This document shows, in pieces, positions 2,897 through 62,601 of a stretch of DNA of 64,000 bases (the stretch's first letter is position 1; each line of letters begins with the position of its first letter). The stretch is from Macrostomum lignano (lineage: Eukaryota): contig NIVC01000995.1 of NCBI GenBank assembly GCA_002269645.1, positions 1-64,000 on the forward strand, read 5' to 3'. The position numbers were made by a program, and so were the translations under genes. The notes under the pieces were generated by a model. It had not been told where the DNA came from. It did not search any database and saw only the letters and a list, made by a program, of their open reading frames with translations.

Positions 2897-3413
2897 AATA
2901 AACATAATCAATCTTGGACGCTCCTCCCGGGGACACTTTGCCATAGACATAATCAATCTTGCACGCTCCTCCGGGGACACTTTGCCATAGACATAATCAA
3001 TCCTGGACGCTCCTCTCCTCCCGGGGCACTTTGCCATAGACATAATCAATCCTGGACGCTCCTCCCGGGACACTTTGCCATAGACATAATCAATCTTGCA
3101 CGCTCCTCCCGGGGACACTTTGCCATAGACATAATCAATCTTGCACGCTCCTCCCGGGGACACTTTGCCATAGACATAATCAATCTTGCACGCTCCTCCC
3201 GGGACACTTTGCCATAGACATAATCAATCTTGCACGCTCCTCCCGGGGACACTTTGCCATAGACATAATCAATCTTGCACGCTCCTCCCGGGGACACTTT
3301 GCCATAGACATAATCAATCTTGCACGCTCCTCCCGGGAACACTTTGCCATAGACATAATCAATCCTGGACGCTCCTCTCCTCCCGGGGCACTTTGCCATA
3401 GACATAATCAATC
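2897..3413. repeat. Minisatellite, about 45 bp unit (44-48), about 11-12 copies, just 3' of the GPCR stop
   Basis: Unit atagacataatcaatcttgcacgctcctcccggggacactttgcc. The overlapping ORFs are repeat translations. Confidence 0.95.
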
Positions 3414-3485: not shown

Positions 3486-4694
3486 TCAGCCGCACCAACA
3501 GGCGGCCCGAAAGCGGCGAGCAAATTCACGTCGGAATTTCTTAGCCACCAGGCAGTAGAGAAAGAAATTAGCAGAATGATTGGCGTACATCAGCAGCTCT
3601 GTACAGGCCAGGCCGAGCTGGTAGCGAGCATAGAACACAGTGTCGTTGTTCGTCTCGAAGTTGATCACGGACGACAGGGAGCTGAGCACCTTTAGCACAG
3701 TGATGGGCAGCGAGGTGAAGATGAAGAAGAACGACACCAGCAAGAGCATCAGCGTCACCTGGTTGACGCTCCGGCCGAGACCAGACGACTGGTAGCTGAA
3801 CAGTGGGCGCCGATTAGCGTTGGTGATTGAGTTCAGCGAGCGCTGCGGCCTCTCGGACGCTGCCAGCACGCAGGTGGAGCCGCCAGCAGTCTGCGTGTCG
3901 GCTGCCGCCACCGGCCGGAGCCGCACCGACTCGCTGGCGGCGTTCAACTGGCCGGAGTAGAGCTTCTTGGAGATGTACAGCTTGCGGATGATGAGGATAT
4001 TGCACACCACCAGAATGGAGATGGGAATCAGGGAGTAGAGGGAAAAATCCAGCCAGGCGAGCGGCTGCTTCAACGAGGCGAATCTCGGGCGCAGGTCGCA
4101 GATTCGATGGGTCCGGTTCGACCCCGGCCGCCAGTGAAAGTCGTAGACGTCCAGCACGAAGAACCAGTGGGCGTTGAGCAGCAGGCAGACAATCAGGAGG
4201 GCGCCGATGATGCGACGGGTGCGCCCAACCGCCGTGTTGGGCGTCGGCAGCTGGGACAGCAGGACGAACACCCGTTCGAGAGTTACGGCCGCGATGAGAA
4301 ACACGCTGAAGTAGGTGGCCATGGTGGACAGGAAGTTGCTGCCGATGCACAGCTCCACGCTGATGAGGGAGCAATCGTAGCCAAGCAGGCAGGAGATCCA
4401 GGACTTGAACAGGCCAGACAACAGGGTCACCTGGTCCGCTATGCTCAGCACTAACAGGTAATTGTGCGTGCCATTTCTTTTCACGTGGTTCTTCAGTATC
4501 CAGACAGACAGGCAGTTGGCAACGGACCCGACCAGGAGGAGCAGCGGACTGCCGGCCCAGCAGAGCCACTTGGCTGCCCGGAATTCCCAGTGCCGAGTGT
4601 AGAGCAGCAGGTCCTGATCGGATTGCATGGCTGGGAGCGGAGGGCAGGTGGTGCGAACTCTAATACCAGCTATACCTGAGACACAAGGTGTCAT
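3486..4694 (-). CDS. Rhodopsin-family (class A) GPCR, FMRFamide/peptide-receptor-like orphan, single coding exon
   Basis: Seven hydrophobic segments. TM1 GSVANCLS, TM2 LSIADQVTL, TM3 ERV in place of DRY, TM6 FFIFTSLP, TM7 NHSANFFLYCL...KFRREF. The true start may be the gccATG at 4628, because an acceptor-like ctcag lies at about 4678. Confidence 0.9.
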   Translation of the reverse strand: MTPCVSGIAGIRVRTTCPPLPAMQSDQDLLLYTRHWEFRAAKWLCWAGSPLLLLVGSVANCLSVWILKNHVKRNGTHNYLLVLSIADQVTLLSGLFKSWISCLLGYDCSLISVELCIGSNFLSTMATYFSVFLIAAVTLERVFVLLSQLPTPNTAVGRTRRIIGALLIVCLLLNAHWFFVLDVYDFHWRPGSNRTHRICDLRPRFASLKQPLAWLDFSLYSLIPISILVVCNILIIRKLYISKKLYSGQLNAASESVRLRPVAAADTQTAGGSTCVLAASERPQRSLNSITNANRRPLFSYQSSGLGRSVNQVTLMLLLVSFFFIFTSLPITVLKVLSSLSSVINFETNNDTVFYARYQLGLACTELLMYANHSANFFLYCLVAKKFRREFARRFRAACWCG

Positions 4695-7600: not shown

Positions 7601-9646
7601 TGTTTCCGGACGCACGGAGCCCCCTGCAGCTAAGTCAAGTATTTTGAACCGAATGCGCTGGGGAGTAAAAAGTGGTCGGAAACAACTTTCCAGACTTCTC
7701 AAGGTTAACCTCGTATCAACTTGGCTACTAGAGACGATAGCGATAGCTACATACGAGTAATACATCTATACTGTATATCATATAGATCATAGTACATTAT
7801 AGGTCATCCATTGGTTACGCCCAAGCGAAACGTGCGGAACGCACAGGCCCCAGGCCAATTTTTGTTCACGAGCCCCCAATTAATGTGGCCGCTCACGGAA
7901 CCTGGGTACTTGATAGCTACTCAGACATATCAGTTGCTCCACCCCTCCCGTGCATAAAGTCTGAGTTCTGTATTCAGCTTCAAGTTATCCGTGCTTTATT
8001 AGCCAGACCCTCCGCCCTATATTGTCTGGCAGAGCGAGGCGAAAAGAATGGAATTAGTTAAGAAGGAATTGGAAGTTTTTCCAACCCGAATAATCCCTTC
8101 CTATGATGCCTTCATTTAAAACCTTTCAGTTCGGCAGCTTGCAGCAATAGTTTAGTCTAGCTTTCGTCTCCGAATCTCGTTTGGTTTTAGTGTCTGATCT
8201 TGATCCTATCTACCTGTGCTAGGCCTCAGAAATCAGTTGTACCTTATAACGGGTTGCCCTTATATTCTCAGCAGCCGGATTATACGCGGTCAGCTAATCC
8301 GAGCGGAGATCTGAGCAAATCTAGCGTAGGGCGCGGAGACATAGGAAATTATCCCGTGTCAGAAGCTCCTCGCATTTATAATTGGGATTTAACAGCCGCT
8401 CTGTAGAAAAATGTGTGGCAGACGGCGAGAGGTCGCTCGCCGAAAGTTCTAGGATGCAGCCAGTAATCCAATATACTAAAAATCAAAACTATGTACCTAC
8501 CTACCTATATATGTATAGGAACTTTCGTTTGTCGCTTCAGTGACATCATCCCGCAGTCAGTCGGTGCTGTTAGAAGTCGCGTGATGGATTTCACGCAACT
8601 CCAAACAGTACACAGAAAGATCAGTTGCTCATTTGAGATCAGTTCAAATCACAGCATGGTTGCTCTGTAAGTTAAAGATTGCTCAAATCGGTGTTAAAAT
8701 GGGTCTGAATACTGATTTTGACACCGAGCAGTGTAAAAATTGAAAGAGAAAAGTTTTCATGTTCTTCCACAGACAGAGATAGAAAATATAGTTTAAAGCT
8801 GAATATCAAAAACAAATGAAAATAGTCATTATTGCTTGGTTCTTGTCAATTTCGCTAATTTACCTTAGTTTAATACGATTCTGAAAGTGTTTCACAAGGA
8901 AACGATTGCTACTAAAATTAGGAGCTCATTGATTTATCATTGAAGCATGCGCAGACGTACTCAAATCCGACTATTGAATCCCTTGTTTACGCCTTCTACG
9001 CCAAGAAATCAATGAATAGACTAAATTCGTCAAGAAATGTGTACTTATAGGAATCATTTGACGATAGACCCTAGACTAGGAGTATAATTAAAAGATCCAT
9101 ATTTCTTTGGACTGATTGTTGGGCCAAATTAATCAAAGTCTACGAGCGTACCCCAGAGTTGGCTGGTCAATTCGCTAACTAGCCAAGTACCGGCGTAGTT
9201 AAGAAACGGAATTATAGCCCGTAGCTTAGTAAGCTCATTCTAGATTAATTTACAGTTAGTACCCACCTAGGACAATGGTTGACGGAATTTATAACATGCC
9301 ATACGACGCTCCGATAGAGGTTTGTCAACGAAAATTTCCTGCGCTTACTCAACTATGTTGTTGCTTGTGATTATTAAGTTACAACTCAGCGATATTAAAA
9401 GCCGCCACTATAGACTGTGTACCTGAGTAAGAGGTTAAAATGATTCCTTTGAAGTGTAGTGAATTGAAGTCGAACGTTTCCCCTTCGCTCTATAGGCAAC
9501 GTTGACGGTCTTTTAATTTTGCTGAGTACATCTTAAGACTTAAGTCCTTAGCTTAAGATTCTTAGATGGTGCTGTTCCAAAATTTTGTGCGCCCGAGTGG
9601 CAATATAAATAATTACCCGATAATACTAAAATTCTTTTCCAACCAG

Positions 9647-10623
9647 TTGATTCAACTCTGGATTGACGACATCTCTCAAGGCCGACCCAACCTGGTTCAA
9701 GTGAAGAACAATGTTCCGCCCCAGGTCCTACTGTATCACGTGCTTATATTTATTTTCGGAGTGCTACTACTACTGTTGATGGCCGTTCTAGCAACTATTG
9801 AGGCAAGGTAAGGCTCGGGCATTGTTTGGCCTGTTTCAATCCATTTCTAGGTTTTTTGTTGAATCCAATTCAATTGGTTTCTGCACGAATTACAGTGCTT
9901 TTTGCACAAAATGCATTTGATGCTTCTTAAAGTGAATAATGAGCCGAATTATGAGTGCATGGGCAAACAAAGCACTCTAGTCAACCAGACCAACGCCTGC
10001 AAAATACACATGACCAGCTGCCTCAAGGGATGACGGAAAGCAGCCTACTCAGCTTCGTACTATCCACGGCCACCTCTGCTTAACTTGCAAGTGCTGGCAG
10101 CAAATACGTTGGGCTCTTGTTATCATCGCTGTTGTGTTCTAATTGACACAGAGAGTTTCGTTTGATTAAAGCTTTTGAGCTCAGAGATACACATCTCGCT
10201 CACAATATATTTATAGAGATCAAACTCCTACTTGCACGTTGCACGTTGCAATCTCCTACTCATTCTAGTCTTAGTACAGTATACGCCCACGCATTCAATA
10301 AGGCCAATAGTTCATTGTCAGTAGTCAATTCATTGCGCGAGCATTGTCAATCACAACAATCGCTCATGCTCACCTTGCTGCATACAACTCACTAACATCT
10401 ATTTAACTATGCTTGCCAACATTATTTAAACAGATACGGCATCGCCCTTCATAGACTGCTGCCTCTAGTCACCCGGGTCATCGACGTTGCACAGCTTTTT
10501 GATCTCACTCCGCTGCCGCAGTCTAAGCGCATATCATTTGGCGTGGAGGCGCAGAACAGCACGAACTACAATCGAGCCCTCACTGATGCCTTGCTGAATC
10601 CAGGAGCGCAGCTTCATACTTGA
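9647..10623 (+). CDS. Candidate 3' exons of an unidentified single-pass membrane protein
   Basis: Exon 9647-9807 (ccag| LIQLWIDD...VLIFIFGVLLLLLMAVLATIEA |gtaagg, phase 2) joins in frame to exon 10434-10623 (acag| YGIALHRLL...QLHT*). A possible phase-0 upstream exon at 9271-9319. No expression data. Confidence 0.45.
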
Positions 10624-10699
10624 CAGCATATTTGAGCTACATGTAATAGCATGGCCGCTGGACTGCGCTGAGTTGCTTGGTTTCAATTCCTAGTTCTAA

Positions 10700-11160
10700 T
10701 GATTGATCTATCCACCTCACAGGTCCTCAGATTGATCTATCCACCTCACAGATCCTCAGATTGATCTATACACCTCACAGATCCTCAGATTGATCTATCC
10801 ACCTCAAAGATCCTCCTCAGATTGATCTGTATCTATCCACCTTAAAGATCCTCCTCAGATTGATCTATTGAACACTTCAAAGATCCTCAGATTGATCTAT
10901 CCACCTCAAAGATCCTCCTCAGATTGATCTGTATCTATCCACCTTAAAGATTCTCCTCAGATTGATCTATTGAACACTTCAAAGATCCTCAGATTGATCT
11001 ATCCACCTTAAAGATTCTCCTCAGATTGATCGGTATCTATCCACCTTAAAGATTCTCCTCAGATTGATCTATATCTATCCACCTCAAAGATCCTCCTTAG
11101 ATTGATCTATCCACCTTAAAGATCCTCCTCAGTTTGATCTATTGACCACTTCAAGGATCC
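10700..11160. repeat. Minisatellite, about 29-bp core with insertion variants
   Basis: Unit agattgatctatccacctcaaagatcctc. Confidence 0.9.
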
Positions 11161-11648
11161 TCAGTCCACATCCCAAAAACTCAGATTGAAATACTTTTCT
11201 CAAAAATTCTCTCAAGTCGATCTTATCAATCCATGAACCTCGAAAATGATTTAATGCCGCACAGTTAATCAAATTTTAACAAAACTTGAAGCAGTGTTTA
11301 TATAATGGACTCATGTCTCGTTCTTTGTCATCCATCCGTATAAAAAGATGAATAAATAATAAGCGAACAGTAGCATGCTAGAACTCAGCTTCGTGTATAA
11401 TTAACTCGGCAATATCTGCTTTCAATTAGCTAAAATACTCGTACTTTCGAATAGGCTCTCTAATAACGCACATTCAAAGCCAGTAAATTGATCAAGAATC
11501 TCGCAATTATATGGCAAAGAACGAATAAAGGTGCATAATAAATACAGGCAAAAAATCCATACGCAGATTTTTTATAGAATTCGCTATTGTCCCAAGAAAA
11601 TCATTTTGCAGCTATAGGGATCAGGCTAAAGGTGACAATTGTAGGCTC

Positions 11649-14600
11649 CTAGGCTCGCTTGGCCTCGCCGAACTCCAGCACGCCGAGGCCGCGGACGGCA
11701 GCGCGGCTTTGACGATTTGGCCAGCTGTCGCAGCCGATGAAAGCGAAGGCGCCCCGGCCGCGGCTGCACCAGGCGTCGGCTGTGGCGGACGCCAGCTTGC
11801 GGATGGCGGCGCTGAGCAGGTCCGTCTGGTTGCCGACGTCAACGATAACTAGAGACCTGCAGCGGGGAGGGGTCGTGCAAGGGGTCTTGATTATTTGTTA
11901 TTACTTTTTTATTTAGGGAATTAGGGAATATATAGATATAGGTCTAATCTAATACTTTTAGGGATTCTGGAATGCAAGCCAAATACGAGGACCATAGGAA
12001 TTTCGGTGGCAATTCGAGATATTCTGAGAGAGGGTCGGTATTTTGGGGGTTGGATAGATAAGCAGATGAAATTTATGTGTGAACTGTCAAGTCTCTAAGT
12101 CTTCAGATGCAAAGAGCTTACCAGATCCCACTGAAGGTTAAAATGCTGACAAACTAACCGGAGAATCGAGGGAGATTAGCGATTGAAAGACAGATTTGAG
12201 AAGACTCAACAAAACTGCAAAAAATGAGTTTTAATTGGCCTGTTTCAAAAACTCACCTGCTAGTGAGCCCGTTGCACAGACCGCTCAGCTGATCGAATAG
12301 AGCGGCAGATCCTTCCGTGTTCCAATCCGCGCTTTCCGCGGCGCCCCCAGCGGAGTCTGGCGCCTCGTCGATCGGCGCCAGACGCAGTGCGATAAGCCGA
12401 TCGCACAGGCGGAACGAGGCCTGCAAAGCGGGCACGTCCGAGCCGGCCTGGGCCATGACCTGCATCAGGCCGATCTGCCGAAGGAAGTCGCGCCTGTCCT
12501 GGCCGGCGCCGCCGCACACGGCCAGCAGGGAGCAGGCCGCGAGGCGAACGCGTGCCGCCCGGGCCCGCCGCCGCAGACCGATCGGCGCCGTGTCGGACAG
12601 GCGAGCGGCGGCGGCAGCGGGTGGCGGCCGCAGCGAATGGCGAGCCGGTCGCCGAACTCCGGCCTGGTGTAGCTGCGCTGCACGCTGGCCAGGGCTAGGG
12701 AGCTGAGCAGATCGGCATTGCTAACGGCATCAATGCATTTGAATAGCTGCATGGCGTGGGCTGGCAGCGACTCAAATAGCAGCTCAAATATCTGCAGCGT
12801 CAGCTTGTAGACGTTCTCGACGCTGACCTCGATGTCGGCGTTCAGAGCCGCCAGCTGGCTAGTGGTGAAGCTGCAGCACCGGCGGCCAATTGTCAGGTTG
12901 AGAAGCTCAGGCGCCAGACGGCTAGCTGTCTCCAGCAGGGTTGGCGGCCTCCGCTGCTCTCGCGCCGCTGCTGAGGTGCTTGGCAATCTAGCTCGCTGCT
13001 GCACCAGCTGCTGCTGCTGCCGTAGGTGTTGCCGTTGCCGGCTGGGCCTGCAGACGAATTGGAAACAGCAGCGGCAGCAGCACCAGAGGAATTGTGGGAG
13101 TCGTGAGGACTCACTAGTAGAGAGCTGAGTGTCTCATCGTCATTAGCGTCGCCGTCCTATTGAGAAGCAGAAAAAGTAGCTAAAGCTGTTACAGCTGATT
13201 TCAAGGCACCCAAGCGGGCTGCTTGCCAACAAAGAAGACGATTTCAGCCAAGCCTGTATTTGAGCGCTAAGGAAACCACCTGGAAGAGAGGCCTATAAAC
13301 TTTGCGTTTATTGTTTAACTGCATTAGGCAGAAACCAGGCTTGGTGAAAGCTCAGACCCGAGCCCGTTAATCTATAATCGAAGCGGCAGGCAAAAATTGA
13401 TTAAAAGCTTTCCATTTCTTCATCAAGAAAATTATTTATCGCTTTTTATAATTTGACGGCCTGGATTCGTCTTTGAAAACAAAAGAACAACCTCGGCAGC
13501 AAAGAGGGCTAAGCGGATTATCTATGGAAGAAAAAACGTATCAATTTATTCAGTCAAGGCAAACAGGCCATTAAAGTGATTGGAATCAAATTAACTAGAA
13601 GCTGCGAATTATATTAGAATCCTACTCTAACAGATTAGCTTCCGTATCATGATCACATGAAATGGAGAATTAATTAGCATAGGCTTATCCAAGATCTGCT
13701 CAGACAAATAAGATATAGTATAAGATGCTCTTGTTTAAAGACTTTTTTTACCCTCTACATGACACTTACAGTTCAAGGCTGTTATGCGTCTGGGGCTTGC
13801 GGCTTGTCGTCTGATCCGCAGAAATGAGGGCAACAGCTAAAGCACAGAGTGTATTCATAACTGACAATGAGACAGCTAGGGCTGCTGTAAACCCTGTGTG
13901 AGTGAGCAGCTAGGGCTGCTGTAAACCCTGTGTGAGTGAGCAGCTAGGGCTGCTGTACATCCTTGAGAGTGAGCAGCCACTCTCACTAAATCTGAGCAGT
14001 CACTCTCACTGAATCTGAGCAGCCACTCTCACTGAATCTGAGCAGCCACTCTCACTGAATCTGAGCAGCCACTCTCACTGAATCTGAGCAGCCACTCTCA
14101 CTGAATCTGAGCAGCCACTCTCACTGAATCTGAGCAGCCACTCTCACTGAATCTAAACAGCCACCCTCACTGAATCTAAGCAGTGAGCAGTCACTCTCAC
14201 TAAATCTGAGCAGCCACTCTCACTAAATCTGAGCAGTCACTCTCACTGAATCTGAGCAGCCACTCTCACTGAATCTGAGCAGCCACTCTCACTGAATCTA
14301 AACAGCCACTCTCACTAAATCTGAGCAGTCACTCTCACTTAATCTAAGCAGCCACTCTCACTGAATCTGAGCAGCCACTCTCACTAAATCTAAACAGCCA
14401 CCCTCACTGAATCTAAGCAGTCACTCTCACTAAATCTGAGCAGCCACTCTCACTGAATCTGAGCAGTCACTCTCACTAAATCTGAGCAGCCACTCTCACT
14501 GAATCTGAGCAGTCACTCACTGAATTTAAACAGCCACCCTCACTGAATCTGAGCAGCCACTCTCACTGAATCTGAGCAGTCACTCTCACTAAATCTGAGC

Positions 14601-17600
14601 AGTCACTCTCACTGAATCTGAGCAGCCACTCTCACTGAATCTGAGAAGCCACTCTCACTGAATCTAAACAGCCACTCTCACTAAATCTGAGCAGTCACTC
14701 TCACTGAATCTAAACAGCCACTCTCACTGAATCTAAACAGCCACTCTCACTAAATCTGAGCAGTCACTCTCACTGAATCTGAGCAGCCACTCTCACCGAA
14801 TCTGAGCAGCCACTCTCACTGAATCTAAACAGCCACTCTCACTAAATCTGAGCAGTCACTCTCACTGAATCTGAGCAGCCACTCTCACTGAATCTGAGCA
14901 GCCACTCTCACTGAATCTGAGCAGCCACTCTCACTTAATCTAAGCAGCCACTCTCACTGAATCTGAGCAGCCACTCTCACTGAATCTGAGCAGCCACTCT
15001 CACTTAATCTAAGCAGCCACTCTCACTGAATCTGAGCAGCCACTCTCACTGAATCTAAACAGCCACCCTCACTGAATCTAAGCAGTGAGCAGTCACTCTC
15101 ACTAAATCTGAGCAGCCACTCTCACTAAATCTGAGCAGTCACTCTCACTGAATCTGAGCAGCCACTCTCACTGAATCTGAGCAGCCACTCTCACTGAATC
15201 TAAACAGCCACTCTCACTAAATCTGAGCAGCCACTCTCACTGAATCTGAGCAGCCACTCTCACTGAATCTGAGCAGCCACTCTCACTGAATCTGAGCAGT
15301 CACTCTCACTAAATCTGAGCAGCCACTCTCACTGAATCTGAGCAGCCACTCTCACTGAATCTGAGCAGCCACTCTCACTGAATCTAAACAGCCACCCTCA
15401 CTGAATCTAAGCAGTGAGCAGTCACTCTCACTAAATCTGAGCAGCCACTCTCACTAAATCTGAGCAGTCACTCTCACTGAATCTGAGCAGCCACTCTCAC
15501 TGAATCTGAGCAGCCACTCTCACTGAATCTAAACAGCCACTCTCACTAAATCTGAGCAGTCACTCTCACTGAATCTGAGCAGCCACTCTCACTGAATCTG
15601 AGCAGCCACTCTCACTGAATCTGAGCAGCCACTCTCACTGAATCTAAGCAGTGAGCAGTCACTCTCACTAAATCTGAGCAGCCACTCTCACTGAATCTGA
15701 GCAGTCACTCTCACTAAATCTGAGCAGCCACTCTCACTGAATCTGAGCAGCCACTCTCACTGAATCTGAGCAGCCACTCTCACTGAATCTGAGCAGCCAC
15801 TCTCACTGAATCTGAGCAGCCACTCTCACTGAATCTGAGCAGCCACTCTCACTGAATCTGAGCAGCCACTCTCACTGAATCTGAGCAGCCACTCTCACTA
15901 AATCTGAGCAGCCACTCTCACTGAATCTGAGCAGCCACTCTCACTGAATCTGAGCAGCCACTCTCACTGAATCTGAGCAGCCACTCTCACTAAATCTGAG
16001 CAGCCACTCTCACTAAATCTGAGCAGCCACTCTCACTGAATCTGAGCAGCTACTCTCACTAAATCTGAGCAGCCACTCTCACTGAATCTGAGCAGCCACT
16101 CTCACTAAATCTGAGCAGCCACTCTCACTGAATCTGAGCAGTCACTCTCACTGAATCTGGGCAGCCACTCTCACTGAATCTGAGCAGCCACTCTCACTAA
16201 ATCTGAGCAGCCACTCTCACTGAATATGAGCAGCCACTCTCACTGAATCTGAGCAGCCACTCTCACTGAATCTGAGCAGCCACTCTCACTGAATCTAAAC
16301 AGCCACCCTCACTGAATCTAAGCAGTGAGCAGTCACTCTCACTAAATCTGAGCAGCCACTCTCACTAAATCTGAGCAGTCACTCTCACTGAATCTGAGCA
16401 GCCACTCTCACTGAATCTGAGCAGCCACTCTCACTGAATCTAAACAGCCACTCTCACTAAATCTGAGCAGTCACTCTCACTTAATCTAAGCAGCCACTCT
16501 CACTGAATCTGAGCAGCCACTCTCACTGAATCTGAGCAGCCACTCTCACTGAATCTAAGCAGTGAGCAGTCACTCTCACTAAATCTGAGCAGCCACTCTC
16601 ACTGAATCTGAGCAGTCACTCTCACTGAATCTGAGCAGCCACTCTCACTGAATCTGAGCAGCCACTCTCACTGAATCTGAGCAGCCACTCTCACTGAATC
16701 TGAGCAGCCACTCTCACTGAATCTGAGCAGCCACTCTCACTGAATCTGAGCAGCCACTCTCACTGAATCTGAGCAGCCACTCTCACTAAATCTGAGCAGC
16801 CACTCTCACTGAATCTGAGCAGCCACTCTCACTGAATCTGAGCAGCCACTCTCACTGAATCTGAGCAGCCACTCTCACTAAATCTGAGCAGCCACTCTCA
16901 CTAAATCTGAGCAGCCACTCTCACTGAATCTGAGCAGCTACTCTCACTAAATCTGAGCAGCCACTCTCACTGAATCTGAGCAGCCACTCTCACTAAATCT
17001 GAGCAGCCACTCTCACTGAATCTGAGCAGTCACTCTCACTGAATCTGGGCAGCCACTCTCACTGAATCTGAGCAGCCACTCTCACTAAATCTGAGCAGCC
17101 ACTCTCACTGAATATGAGCAGCCACTCTCACTGAATCTGAGCAGCCACTCTCACTGAATCTGAGCAGCCACTCTCACTGAATCTGAGCAGCCACTCTCAC
17201 TGAATCTGAGCTACTTGACTAAATCGGGCTAATCTCATTAAATATATAACAAGGCTGTGATAATACTCAACTATTTGCTTTCGTCGCTCGGTGAGAAATT
17301 GGCCCAGCGCTTGCCGGCTGCACTGCGCATGGAAGCCGCGTAGTTTTGAGTGCGCAAGCGCAGCCTCGAGGCCCAGCCGGCCAGCCAGGTCGGCAACCAG
17401 CCGCTCCGCCGCCGCCACCTGGCTGGCGTACAGCTGGCGAGCTCGATCTAGGGAGTCGTTGACGCCGGGCCTGACAGCGCCGATGCGTTGCGCGTGCATA
17501 GTTAAGCGGCCGCGCGAATAGCGCATGTCCGGGTTGGCCAGCACTTCGAAGTGAGCGCGCAGCCGCGGCAGAGCTGGCTCGTCCAGGGCCCGGCGGAAAT

Positions 17601-20600
17601 TGGCGAACAATGGATGCCGAAGGGGGGCGAGGGCCTGGCTGAGCGGGTCCAGGCGGCCCAGCATGTGGTGCAGGTAGATGATGCGGTTAATTCGGGTGCG
17701 AGCCACGTTGATTGTCGGCGGCATGCGAGACCGGCGTCGGCACAGCGAGTTGATGCAGTTGAAGTACGAGAACTCCGCCAACTGGGCGCGCAATGACTGA
17801 GATAAATATGAGCAAAAAGAAATTAGATTGACTTTTGCTATCTGCACTACTGTCAGTAGGGGAGATAAAAGCGCTGTGACAAACAGAAAATGTCACGTCT
17901 TTGAAAGTTTTTTTAAATAGGAAATTTCACAGAAAGCTATTAAAAAGTTAAAACTAGTTTATAAAAAATGAGAAAATGACAGTGAACAGGTGGAAAAGGG
18001 AAGGAGAAGTCCAACTGCCAGTCTACAAAGAGAAGGAAGGGAGCCCGACGTTAACTGCCGAAAATAGGGTTAAGGTCTAGGGTTTAGGTTAGGGTCAGAG
18101 TCGGCAGTCGTGGAGCTATAGGGGATAGGGAAAGGGAAGACTGGGGTTAGTAGGCGAGCTAGATTTCGCCTTGACATTCACCTGTAGTACAGCCGGATTC
18201 GTTCGCAGCTCCTCTACGCAGTCCTGCCTAGTGCGAATCGAATCCAAATCGGTTAGCGGCTGCAGCAGCGACATTCGGAGCAGCCGGGCCCCGCCACCAG
18301 TCAGAGTGTAGTTGAGCACGGCGAACAGATGGCCTCCGCTGCGGCCATCCAGCGATTCCACCAGTTCGAGCTGTCTGAAGTGTCGGAATTTAGCAGGGCA
18401 GCACATCGAGCTGTTGCTAACAGGCAGAAAAATATGATAATAAAAGTGGCAAAGCGGCGAAAATAACACGGAAAAATTAATTAAAGTGTTTGATTGAAAG
18501 TGCCATCAATCACACTTGCTGCATAGCTGCGCATATTTCGCTAATCTGTGAGAAAATGTGAGAAAGAGGAAAATCTCAAAACTCTAGTTCTCGCTTAACT
18601 CTGGCGCTAGGCCGCAAAACGTTGCCATTGCAAAGCACTCTCTTTCTCTCCACCGAGCCCGCGACTCCACCAGCGGGGCCCACCACCCCGAAAAAGCGGC
18701 AGATGCCGCACGCGTCGTTGAGGTCGAGGGGGTTGCCTCCGCTCGGTGCGCTACATCTGCTGCCGCTACTGCGGCTGAATGATTTCAGATAGCTTGCCAG
18801 ATCAGACGGAGTTCGCTCCTGTGCTATGTGCTGCAGACTGTCTCTATTTATGAGCTGTTTTGCACAACTTTATAATGAATTAAATATAACCAGCTGATGG
18901 GATAAGAAACTACCAACAGAAAGAAAAATATACACATGATTTGCAGCAAATAACGGGTGCCTAATGATTTGCCTAATGATAATTGGAACGCCACATTTGG
19001 CTTCTTACTTCTCCACTGCAAGTCAGCGATCTCTTCCCTTCCCACTTATTGCAACCTAGCTAATTTGCAATCGGCAAGCGAGACATGTTTTAAACGTATA
19101 TTGCTTATTGTTTCATATGGATATTTTCTAATATACATTATTTATATATACAAGTAAGCAATGTCTTTAATCTTTTAATATTATAAATGTAAGGTATAAT
19201 ACTCATAAACTGTCATGTTTATTTAAATATTTATTAAACTTCATTAATATATTTTATTCAGGCTCTTCTAGCTGTTGGACAAGCAACATGTCGCAGATCG
19301 TCGATACCACACACCAAAAAGGCCCGAGATGGGTACCAGGTACCAGGTCCTACCTTCGGCAATTTCTAAATACGATATTAATTGAGATCTCCGGCTGGCA
19401 TTGCCCACGAATTAAAGTGTTCATGGAGAGCGTGGCTGACCAACGGATTTGAAAGGACTAATGCACCATGTGAATAACTTAAACACAAATTTTCTGTACA
19501 GCATAGATCCTGGACCTGCCAACAAAGCATTTCTTGCTTTGCTTCAAGGCGTCAAACAACAAGTAAGCAGGATACGTGTATCACTTCTGCTTATCAAAAA
19601 TGATTTCATTGGTTTACAAAAGAGCCCAAATTAGACACGCACCGAGCCGTGCCGTAGTCCATAATGAGCGACGCAGAATGGGCATTGTAGGCCAGTCGAA
19701 CGCTGGCATCGCCGAACACGGTGTCCAATTGAAGTTCGGCGAATGCCTGCAGCACAGCGCAGGAGTAGAATATGAAATTGCACACTGGCAGCTGCTGCAG
19801 CACTGGCTGACTGTCCGGGTGGCAGACTCGGCGAACGAATGCTCGTCCGTCGGCTTCGTTAAACAGTATTCTCGGGGCCGACACGATTCGGCAGGCGGGG
19901 AATTTCACAGCCAGCAGGCGGAATAGTTCGTAAATTTCCGAGTTGCACAGCGTGTCAGGCAGTAGTACAATCGCCGGATCAAACCAACAAACCAGACTGA
20001 GGGTTTTCTGATAGGCCAGGCAGTCAGTCAGTTTTACAATGTCCAACCGATCCGAGTCTAGGTCCAGTACAGCGATAGCCAGGTCACGTGACTTGGTGCC
20101 GCGGCCTTCGCTAATTGCCATGCAGCGCGCGGGATCAGTTAGAGGCATTGTCCGCCTCTGTTGGCTCTGACGAGACTGCGACGAGCTTTGCCGACCTAGG
20201 AAATCAAGTGGCACTTGCAGTTAGCTGATTAGGTTTGTGGCTGAAGAGGACCACTTTCGATGAGCTCTGGAGGGTGATTACGCAATTTTTGAAGGGAGGG
20301 TTTATAGAGGGAATCGCAATGGACAAGGCCTCACGATGAGGTTATGGAGGGCTACTTCCCATCTGGCTTATAGAGGGAATCTAAATGGGGCTTATAGAAG
20401 TAATTTTAATGGGTTTTATAGAGGAGCTCTCAATGGGGTTCATAAGACTCTCAATGGGATCATATATGACAATCAATGGGATTCGTAGGACTCTAGGACT
20501 TCATAGGACTAGGTTTCATAGAACTCTCAGTGCGGATTAAAGCAAGACTTTTAACGCTGATCATAGAAGGACACTCAATGAGGCTTACGGAGGGACTATC

Positions 20601-21093
20601 AGGTGGGGTTAAAAGAGGGGTTCTAAATGAGGTTAGTAATATGACACTATAAACTGTTTTAGTGACCCCAGATCTGATTGAAACTTGCGGTTGTACTTCT
20701 ATTTATTAATAAAAAATTTAATAACAAAATTCCATCTATTTAGCAACGTTAAAGCTGTTAGTTCTGTGTCAAGGTATGGCTGGCAGCCATGCTAAAAAAT
20801 CAATTACCAGTAGCAGCCGAAGGTGGCATGAATTTGAAGATGCTGCCATCAGCTGCGGCAGGTGGCGGCCCTGGCGCAGCAGCAAAGCTTGGATGGGCGT
20901 GTCTATCCAGGGGACGTTGGTGGACGCTGCTTCTACTCGAGCCCACTGTTCCACTAGAAACAGTTGCAGCCGAGCGCAGCGGAGTCAAGATGCTGCTGTA
21001 CTGGCTGGACTGCTGGTGACTGCCACTATGTCCACTGGAGCCTGTGTAAGCTGACTCTGCTGATGAAGCCAGAAAATGGTGGCCCCGCTTCAT
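11649..21093 (-). CDS. MSH4: MutS homolog 4-like protein with degenerate ATPase domain; one apparent frameshift at about 12615
   Basis: Exons 21093-20808, 20195-19643, 18374-18182, 17796-about 17260, about 13050-12257, 11856-11649. Phases are consistent wherever both ends could be fixed; the exon 4/5 junction is unresolved. Motifs AISEGRG, LELVESL...LFAVLNYTLTGGGARLLR..LLQPLTD, IIYLHH, AVRPGVNDSLDRAR, YTRPEF...GRHP and FLRQIGLMQVMAQAGSDVPA are colinear with my recollection of human MSH4. Confidence 0.88.
13971..17210. repeat. Intronic satellite, 23-bp unit, about 140 copies, with higher-order duplications
   Basis: Unit ctgagcagccactctcactgaat. Rare variants recur with a fixed offset of about 0.89 kb. 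Confidence 0.97.
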
Positions 21094-28800: not shown

Positions 28801-30369
28801 GTTCACGTTTGAGGCAGCTGATATAAGTAGTAAGAAATAAAAAACGGGTCCTTGGCTAGCACTTTCGAATGCACATTACGCACGCAGGTGTTGGCTTGAG
28901 CGTTTAAGTTTCATCAAGCTATTTTATTATTCTATTATTCTATCTTTGGCGTAAACCAATTGAAACAAAGCATTTAATCGGTCACCTCATTTTGCAGATG
29001 TGGTTTACATCGGTAGTCTGACCTACATGCACTTCGAGCATGCGCGCCACTTTCTCAAGTCTGGCAAGCACGTGCTGTGCGAGAAGCCGTTGACTCTGCT
29101 GCCAGAGCAGACAGCCGAGCTGCTGGCGCTGGCCAAGTCCACCGGCCGCTTCCTCATGGTGGCTCTGTGGAGCCGCTTCTTTCCTGCCTACTCGCGTCTG
29201 CGTCAGGCCGTGACGAACGGCGAGTTGGGCACCGTGCGACTCGTGCAGGCCAACTTCTGCTTGCCGGTACCCGAGGTTGTGCGCCTTAAAGAGAAAAAAC
29301 TTGGCGGTGGGACGCTTTGCGACTTCGGCGTGTACCTGGTGCACCTGGCCAGCTGGGTGTACGGCGGGGAGAAGCCGCTGTCCGTGACGGTGGCCGGCCA
29401 CGTTAATGAAACTGGAGTAGACCGGAGCGGCGGTATTATTATTAAGTAGGTTAGTTGTAATATGCTAATACTAGTTATGGACACGTATCAGGAAACTATT
29501 AAAAGTACTTTTTCACCAAACCTGCTCATGTTTGTTAGTGTCTTGATAAGCTGTTTTATTATATCTTAATTATATTTAAACTTGGTTGTAGATACTCCGA
29601 CAACCGTCTTGCCTCTCTGACCTGGAGTGGAGACAGTGGACCAGCCACCACTGCCCTTGTGCTTGGTGACAAAGGCAGCGCTAAGGTAACCATTCTCCTC
29701 GAATACTGTATATTAAGCATATTCTTTAATATCTCAATAACTCTATGCTTAGGCTAGTCAAGGCCTCAGAAGAGGTACCTCCATTCAGAATTCAGTCGCG
29801 ATTTTGCTTTCTGCAAAATAGTGCAAAAACTTCAATCTTGTCCTTGCTTTTACTACAGCTGGAAGACTATTTCTGGTGTCCCACCAAGCTGACTCTTAAC
29901 GGAGAGCTGATACACATGCCGACACCGCCGGTTCGTCAGGGCGACAAGTTCAACTTCTTTGAAAGCGGTGGCCTTCTGTACGAGGCTAACCATGTCAAAG
30001 AGTGCCTGGAAAAGGGTAAGCGATCCTATTGATAAGTTTGTCATTAGATTGCAAAATGGTTTTGAGGGCACTATCATAAGTTCTGGCGACAGATCTGCAC
30101 CCAGTGAGAAGCACGTTTTTGCAATTTAATACGCACTCGGCCTAAAAGAAAAGTTAAAATTTTGGCGGGAAGTTTAGACGCGTTTTAGCGCTTTTTAATT
30201 GTTGTTTTACTAATGTGGATTTAGGCCTAAATTTGCGCATATTTCTGATGCACACGCAGGCCTAACAGAAAGTCCGCTATTGTCGCACAAGGAGTGCCAA
30301 CTGATCCACGACATTCTGGCAGAGGGCCACAAGCAACTAGGTGTGGACTATCACAATTTGGACGCTTAA
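25853..30369 (+). CDS. DHDH: Trans-1,2-dihydrobenzene-1,2-diol dehydrogenase / D-xylose dehydrogenase (Gfo/Idh/MocA), copy 1
   Basis: Exons 25853-26054, 28998-29445, 29592-29685, 29859-30015, 30260-30369, all GT-AG and in phase. LRWGI Rossmann start, HVLCEKP, WSRFFP, GGGTLCDFGVY, GLLYEANHV..CL..GLTESP. Confidence 0.92.
26518..26999. mobile_element. MITE (482 bp) in DHDH-1 intron 1
   Basis: Perfect 46-bp TIR ttataaactaaaatgtagcaggacctcgaccatagacttacagtaa (26518-26563 and 26954-26999), with a further about 13 bp of imperfect extension. Confidence 0.85.
27660..27860 (+). mobile_element. Possible LINE C-terminal Cys/His finger remnant
   Basis: IPYENRTCPKC...EVHFMF resembles the RxCxxC...E.HF motif at LINE ORF2 ends. 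Confidence 0.4.
28060..28500 (-). mobile_element. RTE-clade LINE remnant (RT C-terminal region)
   Basis: Frameshifted VYLGGLAPDIASDIKRRRGL and KLFRAVVETVLLYN..EPWTLTDALKKQLDAAH...SNAELYARARLTRPSDLLRER. Confidence 0.75.
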
Positions 30370-36000: not shown

Positions 36001-37512
36001 GGCTTATTAAAAAAGCTAGCTGGACTCCAGTTAACCAAGCGACTCAAGTTCAGCCCTCGGGCCTTGCCCCACCCCTCCCTTTGAGCCGCGCTTTTGTCCA
36101 GCAGCCTTTGACTTGTCTTTGCTCAACCCTAAGCTGACACGCGGATGGATTACAGGTAAGGTTTCTGTCTGTGCCGGATTAACACCTTCATTACGTATAG
36201 AGCAATTTGAGCGTCTCAAAGGCCTGTCTCTGATTTCTGCTTGTCTGGTTTGATTCTCTTTTTTTCAAAATGGAAATTCGCATTTTATATTTTATAATTG
36301 GTTTTCATATCTGATAAACTGTCTCTGCATCTCGTCCTCCCCTTTATCTTCTCCTCCCTCTCCCCTCCTGTCTCACCCTCTCCTCCCTCTCCCCTCCTGT
36401 CTTACCCTCTCCTCCCTCTGCCCTCCTGTCTCACTCTTTCCTCCCTCTGCCCTCCTGTCTCACCCTTTCCTCCCTATCCCCTCCTGTCTCACCCTTTCCT
36501 CCCTATCCCCTCCTGTCTCACCCTCTCCTCCCTCTCCCCTCCTGTCTCACCCTCTCCTCCCTCTGCCCTCCTGTCTCACCCTTTCCTCCCTCTGCCCTCC
36601 TGTCTCACCCTTTCCTCCCTATCCCCTCCTGTCTCACCCTTTCCTCCCTATCCCCTCCTGTCTCACCCTCTCCTCCCTCTTCCCTCCTGTCTCACCCTTT
36701 CCTCCCTATCCCCTCCTGTCTCACCCTCTCCTCCCTCTGCCCTCCTGTCTCACCCTTTCCTCCCTATCCCCTCCTGTCTCACCCTCTCCTCCCTCTCCCC
36801 TCCTGTCTTACCCTGTCCTCCCTCTTCCCTCCGGTCTCACCCTCTCCTCCCTCTCCCCTCCTGTCTCACCCTCTCCTCCCTCTGCCCTCCTGTCTCACCC
36901 TTTCCTCCCTATCCCCTCCTGTCTCACCCTCTCCTCCCTCTCCCCTCCTGTCTCACCCTCTCCTCCCTCTCCCCTCCTGTCTCACCCTCTCCTCCCTCTC
37001 CCCTCCTGTCTCACCCTCTCCTCCCTCTCCCCTCCTGTCTCACCCTCTCCTCCCTCTGCCCTCCTGTCTCACCCTTTCCTCCCTATCCCCTCCTGTCTCA
37101 CCCTCTCCTCCCTCTCCCCTCCTGTCTCACCCTCTCCTCCCTCTCCCCTCCTGTCTCACCCTCTCCTCCCTCTTCCCTCCTGTCTCACCCTTTCCTCCCT
37201 CTCCCCTCCTGTCTTACCCTCTCCTCCCTCTTCCCTCCTGTCTCACCCTCTCCTCTATCTCCCCTCCTGTCTTACCCTCTTTTCCTTCTCGCCTGTTTCA
37301 GTTTTTGTAAAATGTACAGTTTGACTTATGTACAGTAAAGACAAATGGTACGAGTAACTGAGTTATGATGAAAAATTATAAAAGTCTCATTCAACCGCGC
37401 AGGCCTGATCGAAAGTCCAGTGCTGCCGCACTCAGAGTGCCAGCTCATTCACGACATTCTGGCCGAGGGTCACAGACAGCTTGGCGTTGACTATCACAAC
37501 ATGGACGCTTAA
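33007..37512 (+). CDS. DHDH: DHDH (Gfo/Idh/MocA) tandem paralog, copy 2
   Basis: Exons 33007-33208, 34283-34730, 34888-34981, 35554-35710, 37403-37512. Exon lengths (202/448/94/157/110) and phases are identical to copy 1. Confidence 0.92.
36330..37285. repeat. CT-rich minisatellite in DHDH-2 intron 4
   Basis: Repeated ccctcctgtctcaccct(c/t)tcctccct modules. Confidence 0.92.
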
Positions 37513-41200: not shown

Positions 41201-41312
41201 ACGCCGCTTTGGAGCTTCTTCGAACGCCCACTGGCCGATGCTGGCACCCTTTCGGGACCTTCAAGACGCCACTTATAGTACTTTGCATTTGTTTCACAAT
41301 ATTCAGAATTGA

Positions 41313-41812
41313 GGGCTAGGGCTAGGGTTAGGAATAGGACGAGGGCTAGGATTAGGGCTAGGGTTGGGCTGAGGTTAGGGTTAGGGCTAGTGCTAGGCTA
41401 GAGTTAGGGCTAGGGTTAGGCTAGAGTTAGGTCTAGGGTTAGGGCTAGGGTTAGGCTAGAGGGTTAGGGTTAGAGTTAGGGCTAGGGTCAGGGCTAGAGT
41501 TAGGCTAGGGTTAGGCTAGAGTTAGGGCTAGGGCCAGGGCTAGGGTTAGGGCTAGGGTTAGGCTAGAGTTAGGTCTAGGGTTAGGGCTAGGGTCAGGGCT
41601 AGGGTTAGGCTAGAGTTAGGTCTAGGGTTAGGGCTGGGGTCAGGGCTAGGGTCAGGGCTAGAGTTAGGCTAGGGTTAGGCTAGAGTTAGGGCTAGGGTTA
41701 GGGCTAGGGTTAGGCTAGAGTTAGGTCTAGGGTTAGGGCTAGGGTCAGGGCTAGGGTCAGGGCTAGGGTTAGGCTAGGGTTAGGCTAGAGTTAGGGCTAG
41801 GGCTAGGGTTAG
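41313..41812. repeat. Interstitial telomere-like array (TTAGGG / CTAGGG / TCAGGG / TTAGG variants)
   Basis: About 500 bp of mixed 5-6-mer G-rich units with a recurring higher-order block gggttaggctagagttaggtcta. Confidence 0.9.

Positions 41813-62149: not shown

Positions 62150-62601
<452 letters not shown>

What the first reader, a model, noticed from the sequence alone, without database searches (positions are those of the whole stretch)
11649..12660. MSH4-like protein with all ATPase motifs dismantled: a candidate pseudo-ATPase MutS-gamma subunit
Seen: Walker A (canonical GPNMSGKST) reads CGGAGQDRRD, with no Lys-Ser/Thr. The STF signature is replaced by an insertion (DEAPDSAGGAAESADWNTEGSAALF). 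Walker B (LIDELGRGT) reads VIVDVGNQT, losing the catalytic Glu. The FATH motif reads FIGC, and the protein stops about 25 residues later without the C-terminal helix-turn-helix dimerisation region. Yet the intervening scaffold (FLRQIGLMQVMAQAGSDVPA..ASFRL), the clamp/lever exons, the splice sites and GC-rich codon use are retained. Established: MSH4-MSH5 uses composite ATPase sites to form sliding clamps on meiotic recombination intermediates. Inference: targeted loss of catalytic residues with the fold preserved suggests selection for a non-catalytic MutS protein (structural clamp, dominant regulator or neofunctionalised paralog) rather than random decay.
Basis: partly seen in the sequence, partly recalled or inferred. 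Interest (0 to 1): 0.8.

Follow-up and report, generated by a model that had tools for sequence, protein, structure and literature searches.

The report
Flatworm MSH4 with decayed ATPase
This is one of three copies of the meiotic crossover gene MSH4 in the flatworm Macrostomum lignano; all three have lost every ATP-handling residue, only the front part of the protein is still under purifying selection, and this copy as assembled also carries two frameshifts that cut it off before the flagged region.

Summary
The window is Macrostomum lignano DNA, 100% identical to NIVC01000995.1. The flagged stretch is the 3' third of a six-exon MSH4 orthologue on the minus strand. Its annotated product (606 aa) therefore ends upstream of the flagged region. 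The other two copies (884 and 886 aa) read through and carry the same dead motifs, so the decay predates the recent genome duplication. Among the three copies, the connector/core/lever part (codons 92-509) shows 0 nonsynonymous and 10 synonymous changes (p=1.6e-6). The ATPase remnant shows 7 and 2, which looks neutral. About 20 trematode and cestode MSH4s also lack the Walker B Glu and the H-loop His but keep the P-loop; other animals are canonical. My verdict is a real, apparently unreported pseudo-ATPase MSH4. Selection acts on the N-terminal core, not on the ATPase fold, and this copy is probably a truncated homeolog. No second MSH4 was seen, and MSH5 and expression could not be checked.

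The parts
20808..21093 (-). Exon 1 (MKRGHHF..., low-complexity N-terminal tail)
   Evidence: Exon model transferred from P0045/L002 by exact spliced translation. AlphaFold pLDDT is below 50 for residues 1-110.
19643..20195 (-). Exon 2: start of the MutS connector domain, with the MSH4-type AISEGRG motif at 20118-20098
   Evidence: weak Pfam MutS_II match.
18182..18374 (-). Exon 3: start of the MutS core domain III (LELVESL...TGGGARLLR)
   Evidence: Pfam MutS_III 3.8e-18 on this exon alone; coordinates.
17272..17796 (-). Exon 4: core/lever, ends at ...ERRKQI with donor ATA|GTTGAGTA
13970..17211 (.). 23-bp satellite, about 139 copies, filling most of intron 4
   Evidence: Tandem Repeats Finder. 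The gap between flanking matches that holds the array is about 1.3 kb in L001, 2.9 kb in L002 and 3.2 kb in the window.
12257..13156 (-). Exon 5: low-complexity insert, clamp and lever return, GRHP motif, Walker A remnant, signature remnant. It is one frame in the homeologs and three frames in the window.
   Evidence: tblastn frames; DNA alignment; stop positions per frame.
12960..12963 (-). First frameshift of the window copy, a complex change: homeologs read GCGCCGGGAGCAG, the window reads GCGCGAGAGCAG (net -1)
12893..12895 (-). Premature stop (…RLSFST*) reached after the first frameshift; end of the annotated 606-aa product PAA73741.1
12615..12671 (-). YTRPEFGDRLAIRCGRHPL, the conserved MutS motif at the entry to domain V, in a different frame from Walker A
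12539..12540 (-). Second frameshift of the window copy: GGG in both homeologs, GG here
   Evidence: It sits in a homopolymer, so an assembly error is not excluded.
12487..12516 (-). Walker A (P-loop) remnant CGGAGQDRRD in place of TGPNMSGKST
12427..12486 (-). Retained post-P-loop helix and strand FLRQIGLMQVMAQAGSDVPA, the only part of domain V still recognisable by profile
   Evidence: Pfam MutS_V positions 13-53; MSH4 domain V HMM positions 73-105; 30-42% identity to canonical MSH4.
12295..12369 (-). Insertion DEAPDSAGGAAESADWNTEGSAALF at the place of the S[ST]F signature
   Evidence: AlphaFold pLDDT is below 50 for residues 779-796.
11857..12256 (-). Intron 5, 400 nt, CAG|GTGAGT...TGCAG|G, in phase in all three copies
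11649..11856 (-). Exon 6, the last exon, with the Walker B remnant VIVDVGNQT (11849-11823), the H-loop remnant FIGC (11741-11730) and the stop (11651-11649)
   Evidence: All three copies share the same stop. No further domain V or helix-turn-helix exon lies in the 11.6 kb downstream.

Best explanation
The flagged stretch is the 3' third of one of three homeologous copies of the only recognisable MSH4 orthologue of the neopolyploid flatworm Macrostomum lignano. The three copies probably correspond to subgenomes S, L1 and L2.

Shown:
- In all three copies the ATPase domain is a remnant. The P-loop Lys-Ser/Thr, the Walker B Glu, the S[ST]F signature and the H-loop His are all replaced, and the protein ends 26 residues after the H-loop position without the C-terminal helix-turn-helix.
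- The loss is older than the genome duplication.
- The loss has a milder counterpart in parasitic flatworms, where MSH4 lacks the Glu and His but keeps the P-loop.
- Since the duplication, the connector/core/lever part has been under strong purifying selection, while the ATPase remnant has changed as if unconstrained.
- In the window's own copy, two 1-bp deletions end the frame at codon 606.

Inferred:
- This subunit cannot bind or hydrolyse ATP in the canonical way.
- Lacking the signature, it also cannot complete a partner's composite site.
- Whatever it does, it does through its N-terminal MutS core as a non-catalytic scaffold, most likely still in meiotic recombination.
- The C-terminal domain is a still-translated appendage under relaxed constraint in two copies and already cut off in the third.
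For: - Organism and copies: the window is 100% identical to L003 (NIVC01000995.1). L002 is 98.6-98.9% identical and L001 96-97%. Three subgenomes with 1.9-2.4% SNP divergence are published (PMC10733133).
- The same dead motifs occur in P0001 and P0045.
- MSH4 identity: the full HMMER search gave 143 hits below 1e-30, and every hit for which a source gives a family name is called MSH4.
- Motif census: almost all full-length MSH4s keep GxxxxGK[ST], S[ST]F, DE and TH. About 20 trematode and cestode proteins have DG or DD and Q, N or S instead.
- Selection: codons 92-509 show 0 nonsynonymous and 10 synonymous changes (p=1.6e-6). Codons 700-889 show 7 and 2 (pN/pS 1.28). Fisher p=7e-4.
- Frameshifts are specific to the window copy, and its annotated product is 606 aa.
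- Domain V: Pfam MutS_V scores 24.2 bits, below the 30.2 cut-off, against 232 bits in a canonical MSH4. Only profile positions 3-105 of 350 are matched, and no other exon carries intact motifs. Identity is 14-22% in the distal half.
Against: - The selection test rests on few events (10, and 9). An omega of 0.3 or less for the remnant is only borderline excluded (my own binomial estimate, about 0.05).
- The remnant keeps coding-type periodicity: GC1/2/3 = 0.70/0.59/0.82, against intron GC of 0.40.
- An open frame of that length has roughly 0.04 chance probability at this base composition.
- Intron 5 splice sites and phase are conserved.
- AlphaFold, given an MSH4 alignment, still builds the ABC-type strand-helix order with pLDDT of 72-97 over most of residues 712-850. 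Some constraint on the fold is therefore not excluded.
- The second deletion lies in a GGG run. The assembly is PacBio plus Pilon with near-identical paralogs, and an older assembly's model shows a different frameshift. One or both frameshifts could be assembly errors.
- Expression, MSH5 and a possible second MSH4 could not be checked.
Confidence: 0.6

Rival explanations
1. One reading: the whole protein, ATPase fold included, is kept by selection as a non-catalytic MutS-gamma subunit. It would act as a structural clamp or regulator and still pair with MSH5 through a preserved domain V.
For: - AlphaFold keeps the domain V topology up to the H-loop strand, and Foldseek matches MutS over about 750 columns at E=2e-30.
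- The open frame, GC3 of 0.82 and the in-phase intron 5 are retained in two copies.
- The helix and strand after the P-loop are 30-42% identical to canonical MSH4.
- Neodermatan MSH4s are conserved although they lack the catalytic Glu and His.
Against: - pN/pS is 1.28 in the remnant against 0 in the core.
- The distal half of domain V is near random identity and is not detected by the profile.
- The helix-turn-helix region is absent, with only 26 residues after the H-loop position against 128-181 in the complete non-flatworm MSH4s censused. That this region is needed for MutS dimerisation is established knowledge.
- One homeolog has lost the whole region by frameshift.
- The AlphaFold result leans on an alignment of canonical MSH4s.
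Confidence: 0.2
2. Plain pseudogene: all three copies are non-functional relics of MSH4, because M. lignano makes crossovers without MutS-gamma, as Drosophila does.
For: - All catalytic motifs and the C-terminus are lost.
- One copy is frameshifted.
- The N-terminal tail and the C-terminal third evolve neutrally.
- No expression data were found in the held tables.
Against: - Codons 92-509 show 0 nonsynonymous and 10 synonymous changes, p=1.6e-6.
- Two copies keep a 2.66-kb reading frame over six exons with GT-AG introns.
- The gene models come from a transcript-based annotation (PMC5730564).
- AlphaFold pLDDT is mostly above 88 (ten-residue block means) over the core.
Confidence: 0.08
3. Assembly artefact for the window-specific part: the two 1-bp deletions are uncorrected long-read errors, and the window copy really encodes the same 886-aa protein as its homeologs. 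The dead motifs remain real under this reading.
For: - The second deletion is GGG to GG, and the nearest difference from L002 is 135 bp away, so short reads could not polish it uniquely.
- The assembly was Canu on PacBio plus Pilon.
- The ML2-derived model A0A1I8GLM6 carries a frameshifted tail not present in any of the three loci.
Against: - The first deletion is a compound change (a deletion plus G to A), which is unlike a homopolymer miscall.
- Downstream of it, the window copy has 5 nonsynonymous and 2 synonymous private changes, as expected once the frame is lost.
- Indels occur at a similar rate in the neighbouring introns.
Confidence: 0.3
4. Redundant duplicate: an intact, canonical MSH4 exists elsewhere in the M. 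lignano genome, and this gene is an older paralog that is decaying or has taken on a new function.
For: None was found.
Against: - The 90% cluster holds only these loci.
- No hit exceeds 36% identity.
- None of the hits with M. lignano-like amino-acid composition is from Macrostomum.
- Word-index searches with M. lignano and with neodermatan profiles returned no other Macrostomum protein.
- The loss of Glu and His is shared with other flatworms, which fits orthology.
Confidence: 0.1

Closest known systems
Canonical MSH4 (MutS-gamma subunit, partner of MSH5) of animals, fungi and plants
   Same: Orthology by best hits. No mismatch-binding domain I. N-terminal EGRG entry into the connector. Domains II, III and IV and the GRHP motif are present. 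Predicted MutS architecture.
   Different: Walker A, signature, Walker B and H-loop are all replaced. Pfam MutS_V is below threshold. There is no C-terminal helix-turn-helix, with only 26 residues after the H-loop position against 128-181 in complete non-flatworm MSH4s. An 80-residue low-complexity insert sits in the lever.
MSH4 of parasitic flatworms (Schistosoma, Paragonimus, Opisthorchis, Clonorchis, Calicophoron, Taenia, Anoplocephala, Schistocephalus)
   Same: Same phylum. The Walker B Glu is replaced (DG or DD here; DV in M. lignano) and the H-loop His is replaced (Q, N or S here; G-C in M. lignano).
   Different: The parasites keep P-loop GK[ST] (Lys is Arg in Calicophoron), the S[ST]F signature, a full domain V (Pfam 135 bits in Paragonimus) and a long C-terminus. 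They look hydrolysis-dead but able to bind nucleotide; M. lignano looks nucleotide-free.
Loss of MSH4 copies after polyploidy in plants (Brassica napus; PMC6541637)
   Same: A recent polyploid in which one of several MSH4 homeologs appears disabled.
   Different: In Brassica the remaining copies are catalytically canonical and the dosage effect on homeologous crossovers was shown experimentally. Here all copies are ATPase-dead and nothing has been tested.
Degenerate nucleotide-binding sites in heterodimeric ABC-type ATPases, and the functional asymmetry of the two sites in MutS dimers (established knowledge; e.g. PDB 1ng9, 'ATPase-asymmetry mutant')
   Same: One subunit of a two-site ATPase loses its catalytic residues while the protein persists.
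   Different: In those cases the degenerate site usually still binds nucleotide and the domain stays conserved. Here the P-loop itself and the dimerisation region are gone, and the domain evolves neutrally.

Membership tests
MutS homolog superfamily | MutS core domain III reaching the Pfam threshold | tested here: met
   PF05192: 90.9 bits, E=1.7e-25, cut-off 34.1. The exon 3 ORF segment alone gives 3.8e-18.
MutS homolog superfamily | MutS domain V (ABC-type ATPase) reaching the Pfam threshold | tested here: not met
   PF00488: 24.2 bits against a cut-off of 30.2, covering profile positions 13-53 of 188 only. Canonical MSH4 scores 232 bits.
MutS homolog superfamily | Overall MutS three-dimensional architecture | tested here: met
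   AlphaFold model with pTM 0.75. Foldseek against E. coli and Taq MutS and human MSH2/MSH3 gives E about 1e-30 to 1e-26, TM 0.47-0.61, about 750-800 columns. The model depends on an alignment of canonical MSH4s.
MSH4 orthogroup | Closest relatives in an exhaustive search are MSH4, not MSH2, 3, 5 or 6 | tested here: met
   Every top hit to which a source gives a family name is MSH4 (Lampetra 3.4e-60, Frankliniella fusca, Schistocerca, Penaeus, Amphibalanus, Schistocephalus). PDB MSH2, MSH3 and MSH6 score far lower. No explicit tree with MSH5 was built.
MSH4 orthogroup | No domain I; the protein enters the connector domain with the (A/V)xEGRG motif | tested here: met
   No PF01624 hit. AISEGRG lies at 20118-20098. 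The EGRG motif is shared by most hits.
MSH4 orthogroup | Walker A GxxxxGK[ST] | tested here: not met
   GGAGQDRRD at the aligned position. It is intact in nearly all full-length MSH4s surveyed.
MSH4 orthogroup | Walker B hhhhDE with the catalytic Glu | tested here: not met
   LVIVDV: Asp kept, Glu replaced by Val. The equivalence is supported by alignment and by the AlphaFold strand at residues 817-822, but not by a profile score.
MSH4 orthogroup | S[ST]F signature and the T-H (H-loop) motif | tested here: not met
   An insertion with ...GSAALF replaces the signature, and FIGC replaces FATH.
MSH4 orthogroup | C-terminal helix-turn-helix dimerisation region | tested here: not met
   Only 26 residues follow the H-loop position. 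No remnant in any frame within 11.6 kb downstream or in the homeologous loci.
MSH4 orthogroup | Heterodimer with MSH5, meiotic expression, and a role in class I crossovers | not testable with these tools
   M. lignano MSH5 could not be searched for. No expression entry was found in the held supplements.
Pseudogene | A disabling frameshift or premature stop | tested here: inconclusive
   The window copy has two 1-bp deletions and a stop at 12895-12893. The homeologs L001 and L002 have none. Assembly error is not excluded for the window copy.
Pseudogene | Neutral evolution (dN/dS about 1) over the whole gene | tested here: not met
   Whole-CDS omega is 0.35-0.47. Core codons 92-509: 0 nonsynonymous, 10 synonymous. 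Only the N-terminal tail (6 and 2) and the ATPase remnant (7 and 2) look neutral.

The most novel reading that the evidence does not exclude
MSH4 became a hydrolysis-dead subunit early in flatworm evolution: the Walker B Glu and the H-loop His are lost in every trematode and cestode examined. In Macrostomum it has been reduced further to a nucleotide-free N-terminal MutS core that is still under strong purifying selection. If so, the crossover-promoting role of MutS-gamma, or some other role of MSH4, does not need MSH4's own ATPase cycle or the canonical domain V / helix-turn-helix dimer. Flatworms would then be a natural separation-of-function series for MutS-gamma.
Probability: 0.35. Interest if true: 0.75.

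Novelty: new variant of a known kind. Interest (0 to 1): 0.55.

Why it matters
MutS-gamma is thought to stabilise meiotic joint molecules as an ATP-driven sliding clamp built from two composite ATPase sites.

A lineage in which MSH4 keeps a constrained DNA-embracing core but has no P-loop, no catalytic Glu or His and no dimerisation helix-turn-helix would test that view directly. So would a whole clade (trematodes and cestodes) with a conserved but hydrolysis-dead MSH4. Together they offer natural mutants for asking which MutS-gamma functions need which ATPase site.

The apparent disabling of one of three homeologs in a neopolyploid also echoes the MSH4 dosage reduction that stabilises meiosis in polyploid Brassica (PMC6541637).

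I found no paper in the held library that mentions MSH4 in Macrostomum or the motif loss in flatworms.

Tried and rejected
- **Mini-intron between GRHPL and Walker A.** Rejected: there is no AG acceptor in that stretch (read), and the homeologs read straight through with one extra base.
- **C-terminal MSH4 exon remnant on the minus strand at about 10440-10640.** Rejected. This stretch is the last exon of a small plus-strand gene (131 aa, called in L003). The MSH4 domain V profile finds nothing there.
- **Alternative exons with intact Walker A or B.** None in six frames of the window, L001 or L002.
- **The 67-nt GT...AG segment inside exon 5 (13114-13048) as an intron.** Splicing it would run into a stop; the annotated CDS keeps it.
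- **Word-index protein searches.** Searches with the M. lignano protein and with a flatworm alignment headed by it returned only its own cluster plus GC-rich bacterial MutS. The exhaustive HMMER search and a neodermatan-only profile were needed.
- **Hits with M. lignano-like amino-acid composition as a second Macrostomum MSH4.** They turned out to be shrimp, barnacle, fungi or unnamed metagenome contigs.
- **PDB sequence search.** It returned no chain named MSH4 or MSH5.
- **Expression look-ups.** Supplements of three M. lignano papers gave nothing for this gene; the files were partly cut when stored.
Full report
**What is at the coordinates**

- CGGAGQDRRD at 12516-12487
- FLRQIGLMQVMAQAGSDVPA at 12486-12427
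- DEAPDSAGGAAESADWNTEGSAALF at 12369-12295
- VIVDVGNQT at 11849-11823
- FIGC at 11741-11730
- a stop at 11651-11649, 26 residues after FIGC

HMMER aligns VCGGAGQDRRDFLRQ to Taq MutS ITGPNMAGKSTFLRQ, so the Walker A equivalence is positional. The intron between the two coding blocks is CAG|GTGAGT...TGCAG|G and is in phase.

However, the upstream conserved motif YTRPEFGDRLAIRCGRHPL (12671-12615) lies in a different reading frame.

**Organism, gene and copies**

A protein search identified Macrostomum lignano (PAA57927.1). The 90% cluster holds three annotated loci of assembly GCA_002269645.1.

The window is 100% identical to NIVC01000995.1 (L003). L002 is 98.6-98.9% identical and L001 96-97%. 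This matches the published three-subgenome structure (S, L1, L2) of this neopolyploid, with 1.9-2.4% SNP divergence (PMC10733133).

The gene has six exons on the minus strand: 21093-20808, 20195-19643, 18374-18182, 17796-17272, 13156-12257 and 11856-11649. All introns are GT-AG. A 3.2-kb 23-bp satellite fills most of intron 4.

**The window copy is frameshifted**

Aligned with both homeologs, the window lacks one base at about 12963. This is a compound change, GCGCCGGGAGCAG to GCGCGAGAGCAG. It also lacks one base at about 12539, GGG to GG.

Exon 5 is therefore read in three frames here but in one frame in L001 and L002. After the first deletion the frame stops at 12895-12893. The annotated product of this copy is accordingly only 606 aa (PAA73741.1). 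The homeologs give 884 aa (a partial model) and 886 aa, with identical dead motifs and the same stop.

The flagged region is thus, as assembled, downstream of a premature stop in this copy.

A caveat applies. The assembly is PacBio (Canu) polished with Pilon (PMC5730564). The second deletion sits in a homopolymer with no copy-specific difference within 135 bp. An older assembly's model shows a different frameshift. Assembly error is therefore possible, though less so for the compound first change.

**Family**

Pfam finds MutS_III at 1.7e-25. MutS_V scores only 24.2 bits against a cut-off of 30.2, covering profile positions 13-53 of 188. A canonical MSH4 scores 232 bits and Paragonimus MSH4 scores 135.

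An exhaustive HMMER search of 1.84 billion representatives gave 143 hits below 1e-30. The best are 28-36% identical, mostly over residues 120-506. Every hit for which a source gives a family name is called MSH4: lamprey, thrips (Frankliniella fusca), locust, shrimp, barnacle and the tapeworm Schistocephalus.

An AlphaFold model built on a 64-sequence MSH4 alignment has pTM 0.75. Ten-residue block means of pLDDT are mostly above 88 for residues 111-520 and 590-690, and 72-97 over most of 712-850, with dips to about 45-51 at 701-710 and 781-800. From residue 851 on they are below 50. Foldseek matches bacterial MutS and human MSH2/MSH3 at about 1e-30 to 1e-26.

**How unusual the motifs are**

Among the 150 best relatives, essentially every full-length MSH4 keeps GxxxxGK[ST], S[ST]F, hhhhDE and T-H.

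The exceptions are parasitic flatworms. A further search with a neodermatan profile and a motif census gave this pattern:

| Group | Walker B | H-loop | P-loop and signature |
|---|---|---|---|
| About 20 trematode and cestode MSH4s (Schistosoma, seven species; Heterobilharzia, Paragonimus, Opisthorchis, Clonorchis, Calicophoron, Taenia, Anoplocephala, Schistocephalus) | D-G in trematodes, D-D in cestodes | Q, N or S in place of His | GK[ST] kept (Lys is Arg in Calicophoron), S[ST]F kept |
| Molluscs, annelids, a nemertean, echinoderms, vertebrates, a sponge, a cnidarian | canonical | canonical | canonical |
| M. lignano | D-V | G-C | both lost, and the C-terminus as well |

M. lignano shares the loss of Glu and His and goes much further.

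A profile of intact MSH4 domain V (350 positions) matches only positions 3-105 in any frame of the whole window and of both homeologous loci. There is therefore no hidden exon with intact motifs and no helix-turn-helix remnant.

Identity to canonical MSH4 by region is:
- core: 25-30%
- the 50 residues starting at Walker A: 30-42%
- the rest of domain V: 14-22%, against 31-62% in other taxa

**Selection**

Whole-CDS omega between copies is 0.35-0.47. The changes are very unevenly placed:

| Codons | Region | Nonsynonymous | Synonymous | Note |
|---|---|---|---|---|
| 92-509 | connector, core, lever | 0 | 10 | binomial p=1.6e-6 |
| 1-91 | N-terminal tail | 6 | 2 | |
| 510-699 | insert, lever return, clamp | 8 | 5 | plus a 6-nt indel and one frameshift |
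| 700-889 | ATPase remnant | 7 | 2 | pN/pS 1.28, plus one frameshift |

Core against remnant gives Fisher p=7e-4. The gene is therefore not a plain pseudogene, but recent constraint lies on the N-terminal core and not on the ATPase-like fold.

Against complete neutrality of the remnant:
- Its composition is still codon-periodic: GC1/2/3 = 0.70/0.59/0.82, against intron GC of 0.40.
- An open frame of that length has roughly 0.04 chance probability at this composition.
- The intron 5 phase is conserved.
- AlphaFold keeps the strand order.

I read it as a still-translated appendage under relaxed constraint in two copies, lost in the third.

**Mechanism (inferred)**

With no P-loop Lys-Ser/Thr and no Walker B Glu or H-loop His, this subunit cannot bind or hydrolyse ATP canonically.

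Without the signature, it cannot complete a partner's composite site. Without the helix-turn-helix, canonical MutS dimerisation is doubtful. Both points follow from established knowledge of MutS and ABC-type ATPases.

The constrained part is the DNA-embracing core. The most likely role is a non-catalytic scaffold in meiotic recombination, possibly still with MSH5.

Alternatives are listed with their tests: fold under selection, plain pseudogene, assembly artefact for the frameshifts, and redundant paralog.

**What could not be done**

- M. lignano MSH5, a possible second MSH4 in the genome, and planarian or other Macrostomum orthologues were out of reach.
- No expression data for the gene were found in the held supplements.
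- No paper in the held library mentions MSH4 in Macrostomum or the flatworm motif loss.

**Verdict**

It is wrong about where selection acts, and it overlooked that this particular copy is probably truncated.

The phylum-level pattern of a hydrolysis-dead MSH4 in flatworms is the more interesting result. It is a new variant of a known kind.

Noticed in passing
not in the window: proteins P0053, P0059, P0083, P0156, P0234-P0249: All trematode and cestode MSH4 orthologues examined replace the Walker B Glu (DG or DD) and the H-loop His (Q, N or S) while keeping the P-loop (Lys is Arg in Calicophoron) and the S[ST]F signature. Other animal phyla are canonical. I found no mention of this in the held literature.
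   Followed up: partly
window 13970-17211 (intron 4 of the MSH4 gene); L001 about 13895-15166; L002 about 7880-10787: A 23-bp satellite (TGAGCAGCCACTCTCACTGAATC, about 139 copies, 90% matches) fills most of the intron. The stretch holding it differs between the three homeologs: about 1.3, 2.9 and 3.2 kb.
   Followed up: partly
window, whole length (e.g. 1260-1701, 2898-3413, 36350-37294, 44024-44864, 46340-47134, 48316-49046, 55951-56835, 57026-58425, 62152-62607, 63492-63999): The window is packed with tandem-repeat arrays: 38 Tandem Repeats Finder rows, roughly 27 distinct arrays, with periods from 4 to 165 bp. Many produce long spurious ORFs in several frames.
   Followed up: no
window 41312-41812: An interstitial array of degenerate telomere-like hexamers, (AGGGTT/AGGGCT)n, about 85 copies.
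   Followed up: no
window 29000-29449 and 34285-34734 (+); also L001 850-5357 and L003 725-5244: Two near-identical exons of GFO/IDH/MocA-type oxidoreductase genes (dihydrodiol-dehydrogenase-like) lie 5.3 kb apart, a local tandem duplication. A gene of the same family lies next to MSH4 in the homeologous loci too.
   Followed up: partly
window 38310-39539 (+) and 3486-4694 (-): Two long single-exon ORFs encode rhodopsin-family GPCRs (Pfam 7tm_1 at 8.6e-42 and 3e-16).
   Followed up: partly
window 9566-10623 (+): A small two-exon gene lies convergent to the 3' end of MSH4. The annotated product is 131 aa, with a predicted hydrophobic stretch and no Pfam hit. Its last exon on the opposite strand briefly looked like an MSH4 C-terminal remnant but is not.
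   Followed up: yes
window 13114-13048 (-), inside exon 5: A 67-nt segment has perfect GTGAGT...CTGCAG ends and looks like a short intron. It is kept in the annotated coding sequence, and splicing it would run into a stop. L002 has a 6-nt deletion inside it.
   Followed up: partly
protein P0046 (UniProt A0A1I8GLM6, older ML2 assembly) against L001-L003: This model matches exons 3-4 exactly, then switches frame at a point where all three Mlig_3_7 loci read through. It shows that single-base indel errors occur in M. lignano assemblies.
   Followed up: yes
window 10701-11164: A compound 38/102/140-bp repeat array lies about 500 bp downstream of the MSH4 stop codon. It is also present, with a different length, in the homeologous loci.
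   Followed up: no
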